Positions 28,528-42,900 of a stretch of 64,000 bases of DNA are shown piece by piece. How positions within the stretch are numbered: the first letter of the stretch is position 1; each line of letters opens with the position of its first letter. Made by a program: the position numbers and the translations under genes. The notes beneath the pieces were generated by a model. It saw only the letters and a list, made by a program, of their open reading frames with translations. It was not told the DNA's origin and made no database searches. This DNA comes from Salisapilia sapeloensis CBS 127946. Its lineage: Eukaryota; Protista; Oomycota. Location: positions 1-64,000 of the forward strand of contig JAADVB010000014.1 in NCBI GenBank assembly GCA_023334545.1, read 5' to 3'.

Positions 28528-29740
28528 TTAAACGACTAGACGCACCATAAATCGTCCGGAAACCTGCTTATAATGTTTCCAAATAACAGGCTCATCCACA
28601 AACGGAACTCGGACAGTACCATGGTGACTATGGTCTGGGATCAGGGCACATCGACAGGTAGACAAGGAATCACAGCCGCCAGATCGTCTCAACGGAAGCC
28701 ACATGGCATCACAACTAGAAGCATGTCAGTACCGTCCACAGGATTCAATGAGTTGCATCTTACCTTTCAAGTAAATCGGACTCGAAGTCACACCCGGTGC
28801 ACTCGACGTGGACGGAGACGACAGCAAATTCAAACATGCGGAGTGGAAGAAATCGATTGTGCCACGGTTGATGCACACTCGTGCCATTCATTGCCACTAC
28901 TCTCGGTGCCAACTGCTTTTGGGATAAAGTGTTATCTCTATCAGAAAGAATGCGTCCTTTGTGCCCATCTTTGAAGTAGACTTGGATGTTTTCTAGATCC
29001 AATGACACTGGCATCGGCTGCGTGTTCTGAACGATCAACCGGAATTGGACACATGCCAAGTTCTGATCGATCGACAAGACACGGCAATCGGGTTGATGGG
29101 CTACCATGAGCCACGCATCTACGCCTTCCTGTCGATTCTTTCCCCAGATAACCTGTCGCTGTTGCACAAGATGAGCTCAAGTCTACAGTTTATGAAAACA
29201 GAACGTACTTGCGTCGTGTAGCGTCCGCGTGGGATACATCGGTTTTGATGTAGAAACTCGTACAAGTGACGAAAGTCCATAATGTTATATCGACGCAATA
29301 ACGCCTCCGGACGTTCGAGATGCCATCGAGCAATGCAGTATTGTTTCCACAGACGCTCTCGACGACAGACTTGACGCCAAAACGTATTTACACGTCTATC
29401 ATCCTTTTCAGTACGCCGTTTGCAGAGAAATTAATAAAGAACGTACGCAACTTGCGCGACATCGAGCGGTGCCAAGAAGCTTATAATAGTCTCTACCTAT
29501 AGTCCATTCATACGTCAGTTGGAGTACAAATGAGCGTCGATAGAGAAAGGTACGAGTTCGTCCGAGAGCCTGCCATCACTTGTCATTTCGACCGCTTGCT
29601 TCGTTTCAAGGTATGGCCTGCAATCAAGAGCATTACTAGGTCACATTCCTAGCTCCATTCTGTTTGGCTCATTCTCCACGTCGATTCGTCCGTTACAAGA
29701 TGTAGGACTCGGTAGGACTACGATTCCTGTCCCGCGCCAT
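28528..29740 (-). CDS. F-box protein (multi-exon; start at 29586 or 29740)
   Basis: Hand-splicing across 51-57 nt introns gives LSDELVETIISFLAPLDVAQVARVNTFWRQVCRRERLWKQYCIARW (F-box). It continues into ORF 28760-29167 and a last exon ending WKHYKQVSGRFMVRLVV*. Confidence 0.75.
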
Positions 29741-30388
29741 GTTGAAGCTCAAGGATGTAGAGTATCTATTCAGTCAACCGCTCGTATCATGCATGGATGG
29801 CATTGCTCTTGCGTACACTCTCGTGGCGTACATGTCGCGCGACTTGATACATCGGTATCGACTCGTATTTCCGAAGTATTGCGCATAGCGATAAGTCACG
29901 TTACTGCGCCATTCGATGGAGGTTTTCATCTTGTGTAGCTCGTTTCCGCCATATACTTTCGACGGAAAAAGGTTTTTCTCTCCCGACCCGATCCTGCACC
30001 CTCGATGTGAAGGAAGGATCGGCTGATAGTTTGAACGAGCGGGACGGTCGTGACGTTGTGAGCTCTCTTATTCTGTCCTGCGTGCCAGCACCCATCCTCG
30101 CCTGTGCCACATGTCACAATGTGTCATGTACGGTAGTGACGGCCCGACCATCTTGTAAACAGGTTCTGGGCGGTACTCTCGCGCGCCCCCGTCCCTTTCC
30201 ATCCTCTCGTGGCCTTGACTGACCATTTTCACTTCGTTTGCCTTTCCTCCGAGATACCCATTCTTTCGTGCGTTGACAATCGAAAGGGGCGTCGCATTTT
30301 TTGTCGCGATTGAACGCTGACGTCGCGCTCTCCACTAGCAACGGACGTGACACGCCCAGTAGATAACTTTCGACTTTCTTTGTCTTTC

Positions 30389-33300
30389 ATGGGTGAACCG
30401 GCACAAGGACCGACGTTCACACGCTCGCAGGACTGGAGCGAATCGAACAACTCGCATGACGATGACAGCTATGTCGCCAAAGGTCCATCTCTATCTTATG
30501 AACGCAAGATACGCCTACATAAGTATGCTGAGAATCGAGCTCGATCTTGTTTGGGCCTCGTAAGTGACGCTTCGACGGTCCTATGGAAGTTGCACGAAAG
30601 CAAGCACGACACGGCGGTCTTCAAACCATCGTCCGACTGGTCTGAATTCCTATCGGCCAAAGCCGTCGTTCGTGCAGATGCGAGCTTTCCACACGTTCTC
30701 AAAACAGTATATGACTTGAAAACGTCGTCTAAATTCAAACTCTTCCTGCGTAAAGTTTTGGGGGACGCATTCTTAGACGCTGAGGTTCTCGAAGATCTCA
30801 ATGGGACAGGCATGTACTCGGACACGAGTCCATCGGCAAAAGCCCCGGCGTCATTTAAACAAGCCGCCATCAAGTGGTGGGCCATCAAGTCGGGCAGTTT
30901 AGCTAGTAAAGCGTCTGATTTCTACGTCCTCGAGTACGTCGGGAACGAATCAGTTGGAAGTGACATTGTTTCGTGTTATTTGTTTCAGGAAAGTCTAGCA
31001 GAAGTCGGTGGGATGCCACCAATCATGGGTAATAACCTCGAGCGTTCTCAATTCGATGCACTCATTTGTAAGTTTGAACGCCTCCCGGCAAAAGACTATG
31101 GTCGCGAGTGTGTCATGATCTCCGTCGCGTTCCAACGACCTCCACCCATGGTCTCCTTATTTCGGAATAACCCGGCAACGGAGATGGTGTCGCAACTGGC
31201 CAAGGGTTTAAAAGAGTTGTTGGAAGACCCGCCGATTCCGAACGCCATCTCGGTCGTTAAGACGTCTGCTTGGGTCAAAGACAAGGAGCGACAGTATTGC
31301 TACATTTGTGTCCGACGTTTCTCGCCGCTCTTTCGTCGAAAACACCACTGTCGGTCGTGTGGTGAAATCATTTGCTGGCTTTGCAGCTCCACGCTTCGTG
31401 TCCCGTCCATTAGCTTTTCCCATACGAACAGTGGACGACAAGTGCTGTCTCGACACCAACCATCTATCCGAGTGTGCACCAAGTGTGTTGTGTCCCACCA
31501 TCGGATGAAAATCGATCGAGACATGGACAACCAAGAAGATTTTAAAGAATGGATGCAACGAGCGCATAGTGCTCATGCGCATCAAGAGGACCCAGTAGCT
31601 CCAATGAAGAACAGTGCAGACCGCCCGACGGAGGAATCGAATCCGAATGACGATCTGAACTATCCTCGAAGCGTAAGTCTTAGTGAAGACCAGTTACCTC
31701 GCAAGTACATGCGACTAAGTATTGAAGAAGAGGAAGAGGAGAAGGAAGAACCTCAGGAACGACAAGGGAGAAGAGTGCCTCGACGTAGGAAACAGAAACG
31801 TAGTCAAGAGTCGTATCACAATCGATTCTCGCAGACTGAAAGACGATCGTTACATGTTGTCACAGATACGCCAAATCGTCCATCTCAGCAGGGTGCAAAG
31901 AATCCTCCAAAACGTACGAATAAAGGGCATGCGAAAGTCTACGGAAATGGAAAGAAAAGTCCAGTGGATGTGGCAGACGATGGCTTTGACTCGCTATTGT
32001 CACCTGGATGTGTCCATGCGGCGTCTGCCTGGGCGACACATCAAAAGGAGGAAACCGCACTAACTGGAGCCTTTCAAGAGCTCCTGACCAAGCTCAGTGG
32101 TGAAGTCCATTTCCTCGTCATCGGCTTCTCGACTGGCTTCAACGCTGATGTCATTATTGATCGTCTACGTCACTTGGCGCCCGGTGTCCCCTACATTGGC
32201 GGCACGATCGCTCGAGGCATGTGCGATGAAAACGCCTGGGTGTCTGTCAATCGCCACAATGATCAGGGACTATTAACGCTGTGGGGAGTGAACGACCCGA
32301 AAGGCGTGTACACCGTTGCGCATGCCGAGTACGCCCATAGTGACGCAAAATACAAGACTAGCGCTGCGACGAAAGCAGCTTTGACTAAAGTCCGGTCGCA
32401 GATGTACTATCCAGCTCAACCTGCTTTTGCTGCTACCTACGCCTGCCCACTGTTCGTAGATCGAGCGCTGGAAGGCATTCGAGAAGTCGTGTCTTGCCCT
32501 ATCGTCGGTGGCTGTTCGTCTGATGCAGCTCGATACAGAGACGGGCAGGCTGTGGCGAGTTGGATGCAGATTAGCAGTGGTGGTGCGAATGGACGGGAGG
32601 CTCATGGAGAGGCGACGGAGATGGGCATTGCATTTGCCTTGTGCTTCCCGAGTGTTGAGACACACGTGAGTTGGTTTAGTGGATATGATCCTGTTCGAGT
32701 GGGTAATGAGTACTGCATGGGCGTCGTGTCCAAGTCTTCTGGAAAGATGATTGAAGAGATTGATGGACGACCTGCTGCCGATGTTTATCGAGAGTGGCTG
32801 GACGTAGTGTCTGCTCAGCACGGATCGGACTGGAAGAACATTGGCTTCCCGCGTCTCGGTAACCTCCATCCGCTCGGTACGACCATCGACTTTGCGTCCA
32901 AGCACATGGACATTGAACGCAGCCATACATTCACGTCCATGAGCTCGCTGGTGTCGTTGCAGTCCAGCGACTGGTCTCGACTGATTAATCGCACGGCGGT
33001 GATCACTGGGATGCACGATAATGGATCGCTGAACACGACGAGCTCCGTGGCAGTCGGTACGAACGTTGTGCTGATGCAAACGTCTGGAGAAGCGCTCAAG
33101 CAAGCGGTGAACCGGATGGGCGCGCAAGTGATGGAGAGCCGCAAGTTTAGTCTGCACGAGACGATCGGCTGCCTCATGTTCCTCTCTGCTGGTGTCCAAG
33201 CGTTGTTGGGGCACAAGAGTATGGCTGAAATGGTCGGTGCGTATAAAGACTGGTCTGGCGGCGCATCGATGATGGGCATGACGACGTTCGGGGAGGTCGG

Positions 33301-33391
33301 ACACTTGCCTTGTTTTAATGACGCACCACATTATGATTCGCTCATGTTTGGAGCGATTATCTTTTCCAAGCGAAAGCGAAAAGACTTCTAA
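30389..33391 (+). CDS. START-like / FYVE zinc finger / FIST (FIST_N + FIST_C) multidomain protein
   Basis: Intact FYVE (WVKD, RRKHHCRSCGEIIC, RVCTKC). The C-terminal ~450 aa has FIST hallmarks (IGGT, PIVGGCS.D, SGY.P, I.EIDGRPAADVYREW, GMTTFGE). Confidence 0.85.
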   Translation: MGEPAQGPTFTRSQDWSESNNSHDDDSYVAKGPSLSYERKIRLHKYAENRARSCLGLVSDASTVLWKLHESKHDTAVFKPSSDWSEFLSAKAVVRADASFPHVLKTVYDLKTSSKFKLFLRKVLGDAFLDAEVLEDLNGTGMYSDTSPSAKAPASFKQAAIKWWAIKSGSLASKASDFYVLEYVGNESVGSDIVSCYLFQESLAEVGGMPPIMGNNLERSQFDALICKFERLPAKDYGRECVMISVAFQRPPPMVSLFRNNPATEMVSQLAKGLKELLEDPPIPNAISVVKTSAWVKDKERQYCYICVRRFSPLFRRKHHCRSCGEIICWLCSSTLRVPSISFSHTNSGRQVLSRHQPSIRVCTKCVVSHHRMKIDRDMDNQEDFKEWMQRAHSAHAHQEDPVAPMKNSADRPTEESNPNDDLNYPRSVSLSEDQLPRKYMRLSIEEEEEEKEEPQERQGRRVPRRRKQKRSQESYHNRFSQTERRSLHVVTDTPNRPSQQGAKNPPKRTNKGHAKVYGNGKKSPVDVADDGFDSLLSPGCVHAASAWATHQKEETALTGAFQELLTKLSGEVHFLVIGFSTGFNADVIIDRLRHLAPGVPYIGGTIARGMCDENAWVSVNRHNDQGLLTLWGVNDPKGVYTVAHAEYAHSDAKYKTSAATKAALTKVRSQMYYPAQPAFAATYACPLFVDRALEGIREVVSCPIVGGCSSDAARYRDGQAVASWMQISSGGANGREAHGEATEMGIAFALCFPSVETHVSWFSGYDPVRVGNEYCMGVVSKSSGKMIEEIDGRPAADVYREWLDVVSAQHGSDWKNIGFPRLGNLHPLGTTIDFASKHMDIERSHTFTSMSSLVSLQSSDWSRLINRTAVITGMHDNGSLNTTSSVAVGTNVVLMQTSGEALKQAVNRMGAQVMESRKFSLHETIGCLMFLSAGVQALLGHKSMAEMVGAYKDWSGGASMMGMTTFGEVGHLPCFNDAPHYDSLMFGAIIFSKRKRKDF

Positions 33392-33677
33392 TTGATAATT
33401 CATATAAAACTTTATTACAATTGAAGCCGTCTTCGTGTCTATCGACTATTGTGCTTTCCAATTGATATTTCATACGTAGTACTAAATATGAGTCTGCCAA
33501 GGAGCATATACAAACGCCAGGGAACATGAAGTTGGCACATGGATATCCATTGGAAACTTGGCTGTTGGAAGTATGCGAAATGACTGTTTGAGGAGTGTAC
33601 CGCTCGAGTGCCATCTTTTTCCTACCAACGAATTTCAGCACAAGTCGAATCGATCGACAGAGCAGGAAGTGAACGAA

Positions 33678-34004
33678 ATGACGTCGAGTGGATCTAGCTG
33701 CGGTATCAACCGGAAGAAGATTAATGTCCGGAAGATGAAGCGCAAGGAGAGTAAGAACCAGAAGAAAGTGTGGCGGTCCAACCATGGCGACCAGCGTGCT
33801 TTGCGCGACAGCGTCAAGTCCAAGAAGAAGCAGCGCAAGGACTCGAAGCGAAGACGCAATTACGCAGAGGCAGAGAAAGACAAAATGCTTCGAGACGGCT
33901 TGATCACGCAAGAGGACGTGGACAAGCTGGAGAAGGAGGAGAAGGCGAAAGAGGAAGAGGAGGCAGCCAAAGAAGAATCCATGGACGTGGATGAGTCCTT
34001 GTAG
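33678..34004 (+). CDS. Small basic/acidic hypothetical protein, possibly nucleolar
   Basis: 108-aa ORF, K/R-rich N-half and acidic tail, with coding-like codon usage. No family recognised. Confidence 0.7.
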   Translation: MTSSGSSCGINRKKINVRKMKRKESKNQKKVWRSNHGDQRALRDSVKSKKKQRKDSKRRRNYAEAEKDKMLRDGLITQEDVDKLEKEEKAKEEEEAAKEESMDVDESL

Positions 34005-34283
34005 TACATGGAGAGCTAAGGTGAAATAGAATAGCTTTATGTTTGCATTCCTTGTCTTCTTGTCCGTGACCGTCGAACGTGGTCAGGGCGTCGACCGTGA
34101 ATCCTGAAAAGCCACACCCATCTCAACTTCTGTTCATGTCTGCGAGGCAGCATCTTTTCTACATTGCCATCCGTAATGAGGCGAAGTATACGCGTCAAGT
34201 CACTCGAAAGTGTATCAAGAGCGGTAACCCATGTATCGATTACGAGAAAAATAGTTTATTATTAGTCCGTTCAAGCGGTGTAC

Positions 34284-39941: not shown

Positions 39942-42900
39942 CTAGACGCTATATTTGCCGTACTTGTCGCCACCCAATCCCACTTGCAACGTCGTCTCGT
40001 TCAAGATACGCTGCAACTCGGCCTTGGCTTCCACCACCGACTGTCGAGTCGGTCCTTCAATCGCCTATAGGTATCCACTAGTTACAATCAAGGTATACGC
40101 ATCGATAACAAAGGTACGTACGAGATAGAGTTTCCGTTCGCCCGGATTCGGCTTGCGTTTCGTCGGCACGTGGCTGCCTCGAGCGATAACTGCAGCGCCA
40201 GTGAGCTCTGCGACGGACTCGGCAGCGTCCTTCTGCGTGACTTTCCAGCGTGCCTGCTGTGGATAGTCATTGATCTCTAGCTCTTCTTCGAAGAAGTTGC
40301 CATTGCCAGACACGGTCGCTTGGTGAGACTGATGCGCGAGCATCATGGCAATCTGCTTGGCCTTCTTGACAGCCGACATGGTTTCAGTGCTCAAGTGCTT
40401 GTCGTCCTTCTTCTCCGTCTCGGTTTCATTCTCCTCCTCCTCCTTCTCTTCCTTCTCCTCGACAAGAATACCCTGGTCCATCTCGTACTGTCGTCGCTCT
40501 GCCTGTGCTGCCTTTTGCGTTTCATTTAGCTCCGACTCGTCAAATGTATATCCTTTGCCTCTAAATCCACTTCCAGGCGCATGTGCTTCCCCTCTCTTGA
40601 CTCTTGCCATGAACCCGTCTGCCATTTGTCTCAATTCGTTCGGCACACTCTGCTTGCCACTTTCTAACGCCTTGACAAGCTCGAGCGAATACGCTTCTTC
40701 TTCCGGTGAAATAAAAGTATACGCCGTTCCTTTCCTCCCCGCTCGACCCGTACGTCCAACGCGATGGACGTAGTCTTCTAAATGATTCGGACAGTGGTAA
40801 TTGATCACGAGCACGAGGTCCTTTACGTCCAGCCCTCTTCCAGCAACAGACGTCGCGACCATGAGCGTACGCACCTTGCGTTTATAGTCATCAATCGTGT
40901 AGTCTCGATCCACTTGGTCCTTGCCGCCATGTAGGGACAGCGCTGGGTACCCTGCTCGCATGAGGTCCTGGAAGATCTGGTCGCAAGCCTGCTGCGTATT
41001 GACAAACACGAGCACATTCCCCTTTTCATACCACTTTCCAAGCAACTGGAGCAGCCGCATGAATTTGTCGTCTTCCTCCCGCACTTCCACATACTGCGTA
41101 ATGTCGCCGGAAGCGGTGCTACGTGCACCAACTGTGATCTCGACAGGTTTCTTCAGCACCTTTCGTGCTAGACCTTCGACACTACGTGGAAATGTCGCGG
41201 AGAACAGAAGTGTCTGTCGATCCGGACGGACGTTCATAAGGATCTTGGTGATCTGCGGCTCGAATCCCATGTCAAACATCCGATCAGCTTCGTCCAGAAC
41301 AACATACGTCACACGTGCCAAGTCTACCAGTTTGCCTGCGCTCATGGTAAGGATATCAATCATCCGGCCTGGCGTACACACGACCAAGTCAGCGCCTCGT
41401 TTCAGATTCGCGATCTGCTCCGAGACAGGAGAACCTCCGTACACGGCAGCAGCACGCATGCCCAGGCCTTTGGCAAACTTGCGTGCCTCGCTGTAGATCT
41501 GTTTCGCCAGCTCTCTTGCTGGTGCCATCACGAGAGCGATCGGTCCTTCGCCTTCCTTTAGTGGAGGTTGCGCCAGGATATGTCGGAACATGGGTAGCAG
41601 GAACGCTAGGGTCTTACCAGAGCCAGTCTTGGCGACTCCGATGACGTCTCGACCGGACATGATGGCAGGGAGCGCTTGACACTGGATTGCAAATGGTTCC
41701 GAGTACTCGAATTTGCGCAAGAGCTGGAGTGTGCGTAGACTAAGGCCGCATTGCGACCATTTGGTGAGTGGTTTCGGAACACTCTTTCCTCGTACGATGA
41801 TCTCTAGATCCTTTCGTAAGGACGCGACCTGTTCCTCCGACATGTCTTTAATCTCCTTGGGTTCGACATAGAATTTCTTTTGAAACGGAATGTAGTCAAT
41901 TTGAGCGTGATCGACTGGTTTTATCTCCTTCTTCTTCTGTGCTTCTTGTAGAATCTCAAGCGCAGATCGATCATCGATTTCATCTGCGTCTTCACCTATC
42001 ACATCTTCTTCAAAGCCTTGGTAGATACGACCAGTCTCACGCTTTACCACAGGCGGCTTCTCTTCAATAGATGGAACCACTTCTTCCGTCGCAGCAGTCG
42101 ACTTTTCATGGAACGCTTGCATAAACTCCTTAAGCTCCTTCTCTTCCCTTGCTTCCTTCTCCTCCTTTGTCTCTTCCTTGACAAAGTCACCAGAACTGTC
42201 GGTTGGGGGGAGGAAGGAGCCGTAGATATTCAACCGACCACCATTTTCTATCTCGTCCTTAGAGATGACACTGTCAGTGGCTTGCTGCATAGCTGCTTGG
42301 TCGGTCAAACCAGCCATGTACGCATCTAGGGGATCCACTTCATCCACTACTTGCTGCATTCGTTCCTTCTGAGCTCTCTCGTCCTCCTCTCTCTTCTTCA
42401 TCTGCTCTTCTGTCTCTTCCTCTGGTGTCCAGATGTGTGGCATCGTCGCCATCTTTTCTTCATTCCCAGCGTCAAACTGCTTCTGAGCCTCCTCCGCCTG
42501 CTTCTGTCGCTGTCGCTCTTTCCACTTCTGTAGCTGTTCCCGTCGACGACGTTTGGCTTGGTCCTCTGGATTCGAATCTTCCTGGTGAAGAGAGATGCCA
42601 CCAAAATGCAAGTCAGTCTTCTTTTCATTCGCCTCTGACTTCTCCACACTCGTGTCCGGCGCTTTCGTTTCCTTGTCGACACGTTGACGCTTGGCATCTC
42701 GATCTAGACTACGTTCCTTTGATCTTCTCGTATATGATGACTCTGTCGGCCTGGACTTGGAGCTAGAACCTTCATGTTTGTCACCGACATTTCGGTCAAC
42801 CGATCGATCAGACCGCTTGCCGTCGCGTTTGGACCGGTCTCGAGACCGAGATCGAGAGTCACGACGTCGACGGCTGGACCGACGCGATTGCGAGTGGCTG

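What the first reader, a model, noticed from the sequence alone, without database searches (positions are those of the whole stretch)
30389..33391. FYVE-FIST fusion: candidate endosome-anchored NosP-like (heme/NO) sensor in a eukaryote
Seen: an intronless ~1000-aa ORF with a START-like N-terminus, an intact PI3P-binding FYVE signature (WxxD, RRKHHCR, RVC), a disordered linker, and a full FIST_N+FIST_C region (~32015-33375). Known: FIST domains are mostly bacterial sensory modules, and NosP proteins are FIST hemoproteins that sense nitric oxide and control kinases or c-di-GMP enzymes. Inference: a bacterial-type sensor grafted onto a eukaryotic lipid-binding scaffold, with no output enzyme domain. 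It could link a small-molecule or gas signal to endosomal membranes. Candidate heme ligands are His in GNLHPLG, GHLP or PHYDSLM. Similar fusions may already be annotated as hypotheticals in other oomycetes, but I know of no functional work.
Basis: partly seen in the sequence, partly recalled or inferred. Interest (0 to 1): 0.75.

Follow-up and report, generated by a model that had tools for sequence, protein, structure and literature searches.

The report
Oomycete START-FYVE-FIST protein, PsFYVE1 family
This is a real, expressed, intronless oomycete gene for a lipid-pocket (START-like) + PI3P-binding (FYVE) + FIST protein, but it belongs to a family found in all oomycetes that has already been studied (PsFYVE1), and its FIST part has lost the residues that bacterial NosP-type sensors keep, so a heme/NO sensor is unlikely.

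Summary
Window 30389-33391 (+) encodes a 1000-aa soluble protein with four parts:
- a START-like fold, seen by structure only
- a canonical FYVE finger
- a disordered linker
- a complete FIST_N+FIST_C module, with Pfam hits above threshold

RNA-derived contigs cover it as one unspliced transcript of about 3.3 kb.

1. The same architecture occurs in Phytophthora, Pythium, downy mildews and Saprolegniales, so the fusion dates back to their common ancestor.
2. A member of the family, P. sojae PsFYVE1, has been studied. A preprint reports PI3P binding and FIST_C-dependent binding of a plant RNA-binding protein.
3. In three trees the oomycete FIST groups with FIST proteins of other protists (Cafeteria, Polykrikos, Rozella), not with the bacterial NosP-type clade. 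Support is moderate (AU p = 0.054).
4. Residues nearly invariant in 82 bacterial and 26 protist relatives are replaced in oomycete members. They include two Cys, the only conserved His, Glu, two Arg, Asn and Gln.

My best reading is a PI3P-anchored lipid-binding scaffold whose remodelled FIST acts as a protein-interaction or regulatory module.

This scan noted START-FYVE arrays elsewhere in this genome, but not this FIST fusion.

The parts
30075..33422 (+). Transcript: outermost limits of the unspliced RNA contigs covering the gene
   Evidence: contigs 30125-33422 (X1), 30152-33416 (X3) and 30075-33416 (X4), each with 0 gaps and 0 differences. The neighbouring contig shows a spliced 57-nt intron, so the runs are RNA.
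30389..33391 (+). Coding sequence, 1000 aa plus stop, no intron
   Evidence: ORF; collinear with orthologues from aa 15 to the end; 20 of the 24 listed differences to a related organism inside the ORF fall on third codon positions.
30497..31225 (+). START-like helix-grip domain (aa ~37-279)
   Evidence: AF2 model m1e4cd3f71dbd. The top 50 Foldseek PDB hits are all START domains (StarD13, CERT, BmCBP, STARD4; E about 1e-8). No Pfam START hit. This region is 72-77% identical to Phytophthora and most Pythium orthologues (64-67% in a few) and about 34% to Saprolegniales.
31271..31495 (+). FYVE zinc finger of the PI3P-binding type (aa 295-369)
   Evidence: Pfam PF01363, E 4e-13. PDB FYVE domains match at E 8e-10. 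WVKD, RRKHHCR, RVC and 8 Cys are conserved in alignment A2.
31544..31993 (+). Disordered charged linker (aa 386-535) with basic clusters
   Evidence: Composition R17 E16 S14 P13 K12 out of 150 residues. Poorly conserved: full-length identity is 60% against 72-77% in the domains.
32003..33382 (+). Complete FIST module (aa 539-998), three pseudo-repeats
   Evidence: Profile coverage 1.0. AF2 model m2e812a7ad0e7 has pLDDT 85.6 and pTM 0.86. VIA Z 20.4 to the FBXO22 FIST domain in 8s7d_D, rmsd 3.5 A over 279 residues. Foldseek top 4 hits are FBXO22.
32114..32770 (+). Pfam FIST_N match (aa 576-794)
   Evidence: PF08495, E 6.1e-10, 39.7 bits (cut-off 23.2).
32774..33304 (+). Pfam FIST_C match (aa 796-972)
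   Evidence: PF10442, E 2.8e-9, 37.6 bits (cut-off 28.5).
32894..32965 (+). Oomycete-specific low-confidence insert in FIST_C (aa ~836-859), at the place where relatives have the conserved L-x-H-P motif
   Evidence: pLDDT below 50 at model residues 304-327. The alignment shows the LxHP motif columns gapped in all 21 oomycete rows.

Best explanation
The gene encodes a soluble cytosolic protein of a family found in every oomycete order sampled, the family of P. sojae PsFYVE1. The canonical FYVE finger should dock it on PI3P-rich membranes such as endosomes, vacuoles or autophagic membranes. The N-terminal START-like domain offers a hydrophobic lipid pocket. A long disordered linker carries the FIST module.

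That module belongs to a protist branch of the FIST family. In the oomycete stem lineage it lost almost all of the polar residues that are near-invariant in bacterial NosP-type and protist relatives. It therefore probably no longer binds the ancestral ligand or cofactor. It most likely acts as a protein-recognition or regulatory module, as the FIST domain does in FBXO22 and as reported for the FIST_C part of PsFYVE1.

Shown here: the architecture, expression, family membership and residue replacements. Inferred: PI3P targeting of this particular protein, lipid binding by the START-like domain, and protein binding by FIST.
For: Domains and folds.

Expression as an unspliced mRNA, and purifying selection.

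The same three-part architecture occurs in Phytophthora, Peronospora, Plasmopara, Pythium, Globisporangium and Nothophytophthora, and in Achlya and Aphanomyces, with a FIST-only model in Saprolegnia. The ESM Atlas holds a 119-member oomycete FYVE+FIST cluster.

There is no signal peptide or transmembrane segment: the highest 19-residue hydropathy is 1.37.

Family-invariant residues are replaced in oomycete members:
- PGxEE becomes PLFVE
- GGSSAD becomes GGCSSD
- YCAGC becomes LSAGV
- GEQG becomes GEIG
- HGNLM becomes YDSLM
- two Arg become Lys and Ala

The oomycete stem branch is long, 1.67 substitutions per site.

In the one solved FIST domain, FBXO22, a FIST-C loop binds BACH1 and heme has no effect. 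PsFYVE1 binds PI3P through its FYVE motif residues and needs FIST_C to bind RZ-1A.
Against: No binding partner, ligand or location is known for this protein. The pocket may have been re-lined for a different small ligand rather than lost; oomycete-specific conserved Cys at aa 612, 709 and 928 would fit that. I had no model coordinates, so the claim that the replaced residues cluster at the pseudo-threefold centre rests on their position at strand ends and on the resemblance to Toblerone-fold and chorismatase enzymes. The PsFYVE1 data come from one preprint and from heterologous plant assays.
Confidence: 0.6

Rival explanations
1. One reading: an endosome-anchored NosP-like hemoprotein in which the FIST module binds heme through a His and senses NO or another gas.
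For: The FIST module is 24-29% identical to bacterial standalone FIST proteins. Three of these were checked and each sits directly upstream of a histidine kinase, the NosP-type operon. NosP-type FIST domains are reported to bind heme and NO. Several His residues are conserved within Peronosporales.
Against: The only His that is near-invariant in the bacterial relatives (81 of 82) and common in protist relatives (21 of 26) is Tyr or Cys in all 21 oomycete rows. Both conserved Cys are also lost. The trees place the module with protist proteins, not in the bacterial clade. There is no kinase or c-di-GMP partner domain.
Confidence: 0.07
2. The FIST module is still a small-molecule sensor, but for a new ligand. 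Its central pocket was re-lined in the oomycete ancestor, for example with the lineage-specific cysteines, and ligand binding regulates the START/FYVE part on membranes.
For: The fold is fully kept and confidently modelled (pLDDT 85.6). The new residues are themselves conserved across oomycetes: C612 in 100%, C709 in 95%, C928 in 90%. Glycine and structural positions of all three repeats are retained.
Against: There is no direct evidence for any ligand. Conservation of the new residues fits a protein-binding surface or a structural role equally well.
Confidence: 0.2
3. Like PsFYVE1 as described in the preprint, the protein is secreted and acts inside host cells by binding host RNA-binding proteins.
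For: The PsFYVE1 preprint reports a signal peptide that works in a yeast trap, reduced virulence on silencing, and FIST_C-dependent binding of plant RZ-1A.
Against: The window protein starts with a polar, acidic N-terminus and has no signal peptide. The preprint itself says that only PsFYVE1 among the orthologues has one. The family is also kept in Saprolegniales and in Pythium oligandrum and P. insidiosum, whose lifestyles, from general knowledge, do not involve infecting plants. This argues for an endogenous role.
Confidence: 0.1

Closest known systems
PsFYVE1 (Ps136834) of Phytophthora sojae, and the oomycete 'FYVE-type domain-containing protein' family with FIST_N+FIST_C
   Same: Same FYVE + FIST_N + FIST_C architecture. 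Phytophthora members are about 60% identical over the full length and 70-77% in the domains. The preprint describes PsFYVE1 as highly conserved in other oomycetes.
   Different: PsFYVE1 is described with a signal peptide and as a host-targeting effector. The window protein has no signal peptide. The START-like N-terminal domain and the loss of FIST-invariant residues are not mentioned in the preprint (the word START has 0 occurrences). I could not obtain the PsFYVE1 sequence, so orthology is inferred from the family, not from a direct alignment.
Bacterial NosP (standalone FIST_N+FIST_C protein paired with a histidine kinase)
   Same: Same sequence family: phmmer E 1e-20 to 1e-25 and 24-29% identity.
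   Different: NosP-type proteins are about 400 aa, standalone and encoded in an operon with a kinase. They keep the PGxEE, GGSSAD, YCAGC, GEQG and HGNLM motifs, which oomycete members have lost. They form a separate clade.
FIST domain of human FBXO22 (PDB 8s7d, 8ua3, 8ua6, 8s7e)
   Same: Best solved structural match: Z 20.4, rmsd 3.5 A over 279 residues, spanning all three pseudo-repeats. It is a eukaryotic FIST domain used for protein recognition through a FIST-C loop.
   Different: No detectable sequence similarity: profile A1 finds no FBXO22 chain at E up to 10, and structure-based identity is 8-10%. FBXO22 has an F-box partner domain instead of START-FYVE.
Protist multi-domain FIST proteins (Cafeteria roenbergensis, Polykrikos kofoidii, Rozella allomycis; TIR-FIST proteins)
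   Same: Nearest neighbours of the oomycete FIST in all three trees. Like it, the FIST module sits at the C-terminus of longer proteins.
   Different: They largely keep the canonical FIST motifs. None of the 16 tested carries a FYVE domain.
Oomycete START-like + FYVE family
   Same: Same N-terminal START-like fold followed by a FYVE finger. Earlier notes of this scan report arrays of such genes elsewhere in this genome.
   Different: Those genes lack a FIST module and, according to the notes, have atypical FYVE fingers. Here the FYVE is canonical.

Membership tests
FYVE zinc finger, PI3P-binding type | WxxD, R(R/K)HHCR and RVC motifs plus eight Zn-binding cysteines | tested here: met
   WVKD, RRKHHCR and RVC are present, with C304/307/321/324/329/332/363/366. 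Pfam E 4e-13. PDB FYVE domains match at E 8e-10.
FYVE zinc finger, PI3P-binding type | Binds PI3P and localises to PI3P membranes | not testable with these tools
   Reported only for PsFYVE1 in a preprint.
FIST (Pfam FIST_N + FIST_C) | Both Pfam models above the gathering score, and a complete three-repeat fold | tested here: met
   39.7 bits (cut-off 23.2) and 37.6 bits (cut-off 28.5). AF2 pLDDT 85.6. Z 20.4 to the FBXO22 FIST domain.
NosP (bacterial heme/NO sensor) | Standalone protein of about 400 aa encoded next to a histidine kinase or c-di-GMP enzyme | tested here: not met
   The FIST module is the C-terminal part of a 1000-aa eukaryotic START-FYVE protein. The bacterial relatives do have the adjacent kinase.
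NosP (bacterial heme/NO sensor) | Falls inside the bacterial NosP-type clade | tested here: inconclusive
   Three trees place it with protist FIST proteins. Forcing it together with the bacterial clade costs 33.5 lnL units: AU p 0.054, RELL 0.049. No experimentally characterised NosP sequence could be included.
NosP (bacterial heme/NO sensor) | Keeps the family-invariant candidate ligand residues (His of HGNLM, Cys of YCAGC) | tested here: not met
   His becomes Tyr or Cys, the first Cys becomes Ser in all 21 oomycete rows, and the second Cys becomes Val in 19 of 21 (Met or Ile in the other two). The actual heme ligand of NosP is not named in any paper I could read.
NosP (bacterial heme/NO sensor) | Binds heme b and NO | not testable with these tools
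   Needs UV-vis spectroscopy of the recombinant domain.
START lipid-transfer domain | Sequence-profile match to START | tested here: not met
   No Pfam START hit at E up to 1.
START lipid-transfer domain | Helix-grip fold matching solved START domains | tested here: met
   The top 50 Foldseek PDB hits are all START domains, the best at E about 1e-8 with target TM 0.6-0.7. The model pLDDT is only 71.
Secreted oomycete effector (as claimed for PsFYVE1) | N-terminal signal peptide | tested here: not met
   The N-terminus is polar and acidic, with no hydrophobic core: the highest 15-residue hydropathy in the first 75 aa is 1.13. No dedicated signal-peptide predictor was available.

The most novel reading that the evidence does not exclude
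The oomycete ancestor did not simply disable the FIST pocket but rebuilt it. The lineage-specific, near-invariant cysteines (aa 612, 709, 928) replace the canonical Met, Ser and Ala beside the three repeat motifs. They could form a thiol-based redox, metal or NO-reactive site. The protein would then couple such a signal to lipid handling on PI3P membranes as a non-heme eukaryotic FIST sensor.
Probability: 0.1. Interest if true: 0.7.

Novelty: new member of a known kind. Interest (0 to 1): 0.35.

Why it matters
FIST is one of the least understood sensor folds, and oomycetes are the one eukaryotic group that has tied it to PI3P membranes.

The gene itself is an ordinary orthologue of an annotated family that has been partly studied. 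Three points from this check may still be useful.
1. The family carries an unrecognised START-like domain.
2. Its FIST belongs with protist rather than bacterial proteins.
3. It has lost the residues that define the canonical FIST pocket.

This warns against transferring 'NosP / heme / NO' annotation to it. It also suggests that the published effector story for PsFYVE1 sits on top of an older, endogenous membrane function.

Tried and rejected
- The AU test under the C20 mixture model did not finish in three 300-s calls. Full IQ-TREE runs with bootstraps timed out. I therefore used a 39-row set, LG+F+G4 and fast searches, so the AU value is approximate.
A narrower bacterial alignment, A3, worked.
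- The primary NosP papers (PMC5468770, PMC10478957) are not held. No paper I could read names the heme ligand, so I could not test the 'true' ligand residue.
- No characterised NosP (such as PA1975) or FBXO22 sequence was available by reference, so neither is in the trees.
- Model coordinates are not exposed, so I could not measure whether the replaced residues or the new cysteines cluster in space.
- NCBIfam gave no hit.
- I first suspected conserved synteny from the 'DEAD/DEAH box helicase' names on some orthologues. Some gene models do carry helicase domains, which suggests fused or mislabelled models. In the window the helicase homologue lies about 6.5 kb downstream on the opposite strand.
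- The PsFYVE1 sequence itself could not be retrieved, so I could not check whether its reported signal peptide reflects a truncated gene model.
Full report

Yes. The ORF runs from 30347 to 33391 on the + strand. Its first in-frame ATG is at 30389, which gives 1000 aa.

Pfam finds three domains, all above the curated cut-offs:
- FYVE, aa 295-369, E 4e-13
- FIST_N, aa 576-794, E 6e-10
- FIST_C, aa 796-972, E 2.8e-9

NCBIfam finds nothing. The FYVE finger carries all three PI3P signatures (WVKD, RRKHHCR, RVC) and eight zinc cysteines. It matches solved FYVE domains at E about 1e-9.

The 'START-like N-terminus' has no Pfam hit. However, an AlphaFold2 model of aa 1-390, built on 23 orthologues (mean pLDDT 71), matches only START domains among its top 50 Foldseek hits in the PDB: StarD13, CERT, BmCBP, STARD4 and StAR, at E about 1e-8 and target TM 0.6-0.7.

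The linker aa 386-535 is charged and of low complexity. There is no signal peptide and no hydrophobic segment anywhere in the protein.

**2. Is it a real, expressed gene?**

Yes. Three small runs of one study each hold a single contig collinear with 30075/30125/30152 to 33416/33422, with no gaps or mismatches. That is a transcript-sized piece with a 5' leader of about 240-310 nt and a 3' end of about 25-30 nt.

The contig of the upstream neighbour skips 57 nt (29494-29550). The skipped stretch ends in CT..AC, which is GT..AG on the minus strand, so these assemblies come from spliced RNA.

A related organism (90-95% nucleotide identity) differs inside the ORF mainly at third codon positions: 20 of the 24 listed differences, by my own arithmetic. 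This indicates purifying selection.

**3. What family is it?**

A full-length search finds proteins with the same FYVE+FIST+FIST_C architecture in Phytophthora (many species), Peronospora, Plasmopara, Pythium, Globisporangium and Nothophytophthora. They are about 60% identical over 99% of the length.
- The START-like+FYVE part is 72-77% identical to most Phytophthora and Pythium orthologues, and 64-67% in a few.
- The FIST part is about 70% identical to Phytophthora.

An exhaustive HMMER search with the FIST part adds Achlya, Aphanomyces and Saprolegnia. Their N-terminal domains are homologous too, at about 34% identity. Saprolegniales have two paralogues, and the FYVE motif of the second is degenerate.

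The three-part fusion therefore goes back at least to the common ancestor of the Peronosporales-Pythiales and Saprolegniales lineages sampled here. The ESM Atlas already holds a 119-member oomycete cluster named 'FYVE-type domain-containing protein' with FIST.

In the trees the window protein branches below the Pythium+Phytophthora group and above Saprolegniales. Its own sequence is not in the protein database.

**4. Is there functional work?**

bioRxiv 10.1101/2021.12.02.470886 describes P. sojae PsFYVE1 (Ps136834) as signal peptide + FYVE + FIST_N + FIST_C. It reports the following:
- PsFYVE1 is 'highly conserved in other oomycetes'.
- It binds PI3P through conserved FYVE residues.
- Silenced lines are less virulent but grow normally.
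- It binds the plant RNA-binding proteins RZ-1A/B/C, and this needs FIST_C.

Later papers cite it. The authors themselves note that only PsFYVE1 has a signal peptide among the orthologues. The window protein has none.

The family is also retained in Saprolegniales, in Pythium oligandrum and in P. insidiosum. From general knowledge, the lifestyles of these organisms do not involve infecting plants. I therefore take the endogenous, intracellular role to be the ancestral one.

Some truncated gene models in the database start with a hydrophobic pseudo-leader right before the FYVE finger, for example P0032. This shows how a mis-called start could mimic a signal peptide. I could not test this for Ps136834.

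**5. Is the FIST part bacterial or eukaryotic?**

The exhaustive search gave 339 hits at E up to 1e-3.

A FastTree of 128 FIST regions splits them into two groups:
- a 76-row clade of standalone proteins of about 400 aa
- a 43-row clade (SH-like support 93) of long proteins of 600-1100 aa, which contains the monophyletic oomycetes (support 100)

*The ~400-aa clade is bacterial.* It includes Gammaproteobacteria, Chloroflexota, Desulfobulbales, Myxococcota, Nitrospirota and others. In all three loci I inspected, the FIST gene is followed directly by a histidine kinase gene, which is the NosP/kinase arrangement.

*The long clade contains eukaryotes:*
- Cafeteria roenbergensis, Polykrikos kofoidii, Rozella allomycis and a EukProt transcript with TIR+FIST
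- P0082, whose contig also encodes the nucleolar protein ESF1
- P0174, which lies next to an ankyrin/zf-TRAF giant and a class I cyclic-nucleotide phosphodiesterase

An IQ-TREE PMSF (LG+C20) tree of 64 rows gives the same split: bacterial clade SH-aLRT 90, eukaryote clade 88/93. So does an LG+F+G4 tree of 39 rows.

Forcing oomycetes together with the bacterial clade costs 33.5 log-likelihood units, with AU p = 0.054 and RELL 0.049. The protist affinity is therefore favoured but not proven. The oomycete stem is very long, at 1.67 substitutions per site, and a few columns, such as the G-E of 'GExP', agree with bacteria instead.

Human FBXO22 is the best solved structural match: VIA Z 20.4, rmsd 3.5 A over 279 residues, and the top four Foldseek hits. 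It cannot be detected by sequence profile. The next structural neighbours are chorismatases (Z about 14) and the threefold 'Toblerone' cyanuric acid hydrolases (Z about 11-12).

**6. The heme/NO idea**

I aligned 21 oomycete, 26 protist and 82 bacterial FIST modules and listed the columns that are at least 80% conserved in bacteria.

Structural glycines, prolines and hydrophobic positions are kept in oomycetes. The conserved polar positions are not. In oomycete members:

| Canonical motif or residue | Oomycete members | Change, window numbering |
|---|---|---|
| GGTS | GGTI | S607I |
| PGxEE | PLFVE/D | G688L, E690V |
| GGSSAD | GGCSSD | S709C |
| Arg | Lys | R786K |
| Arg | Ala | R906A |
| YCAGC | LSAGV | C933S, C936V |
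| GEQG | GEIG/GEVG | Q970I/V |
| HGNLM | YDSLM (or C, P variants) | H982Y/C, N984S |

In addition, the L-x-H-P motif region is replaced by a low-confidence insert (aa ~836-859). The protist relatives largely keep the canonical residues.

The three G-G-[S/T] or C-A-G-C motifs sit at the ends of equivalent strands of the three pseudo-repeats: strands 70-74, 173-177 and 393-401 of the model. By analogy with the threefold enzymes above, these positions would line a central cavity. This is an inference, because I had no coordinates.

The replaced His is the only near-invariant His in the bacterial set (81 of 82).

- H827 (GNLHPLG): present in 81% of oomycete members; Tyr in some saprolegnian copies.
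- H972 (GHLP): present in 86%; Gln or Gly in paralogue 2.
- H981 (PHYDSLM): present in 71%; one residue before the canonical His position.

None of the papers I could read names the NosP heme ligand, and the primary papers are not held. Heme binding cannot be excluded on sequence grounds. But binding 'like NosP', through the same conserved site, is contradicted.

**7. Most likely mechanism**

The FYVE finger docks the protein on PI3P membranes. This is shown for PsFYVE1 and inferred here from intact motifs. The START-like domain supplies a lipid pocket, which is supported by fold only.

The flexible linker presents a FIST module whose ancestral pocket was remodelled. I think the module now most probably serves partner recognition or regulation. 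Two observations support this:
- PsFYVE1 needs FIST_C to bind its reported partner.

In the window protein the equivalent loop (aa ~967-985) carries an oomycete-specific conserved sequence.

A re-lined ligand pocket remains a fair alternative, because of the lineage-specific conserved Cys612, Cys709 and Cys928.

**8. Verdict**

- The architecture and the guess that it is shared by other oomycetes are right.
- The 'bacterial graft' and 'NosP-like heme sensor' readings are not supported.
- The 'no functional work' statement is wrong.

The gene is a new orthologue in a known family. The modest new points are the START-like domain, the protist affinity of the FIST module, and the family-wide loss of the canonical FIST residues.

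The gene is intact. I proposed only ordinary tests and nothing that would strengthen a pathogen.

Noticed in passing
window 29494-29550 (minus strand): RNA contigs from three runs skip 57 nt whose ends read GT..AG on the minus strand. This confirms a short intron in the upstream minus-strand gene, which another note of the scan calls an F-box gene.
   Followed up: partly
window ~39945-42371 (minus strand): A homologue of the DEAD-box helicase lies here. In several other oomycetes that helicase appears fused to, or lends its name to, the FYVE-FIST gene model (tblastn 58-75% identity in three pieces). This explains the misleading 'DEAD/DEAH box RNA helicase' names on orthologues.
   Followed up: partly
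window 33650-34047 (+): A small, highly expressed downstream gene encodes a Lys/Glu-rich protein. A related organism's contig ends in a poly(A) run at 34047 and carries a 6-nt insertion after 33948.
   Followed up: no
P0058, P0061, P0072 (protist or metagenome proteins): These proteins have a TIR domain fused to a complete FIST module. One relative, P0169, is labelled as a Ser/Thr kinase. Protists seem to attach canonical FIST modules to varied signalling domains.
   Followed up: partly
P0041, P0042, P0040 (Achlya, Aphanomyces, Saprolegnia): Saprolegniales have a second paralogue. In P0041 and P0042 the FYVE PI3P motif is degenerate (for example KRRVHCR and RRKAACA instead of RRHHCR); P0040 has FIST domains only, with no FYVE hit. 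These copies probably no longer bind PI3P.
   Followed up: no
P0032-P0035, P0209, P0210: These truncated gene models of the family stop right after '...VYQE', and one starts with a hydrophobic pseudo-leader just before the FYVE finger. This suggests that some species have introns at these two places and that automated models can mimic a signal peptide.
   Followed up: no
L058, L005, L054 (bacterial loci): In all three loci the standalone FIST gene is followed directly by a (hybrid) histidine kinase. In Desulfurivibrio a sigma-54 response regulator comes next.
   Followed up: partly
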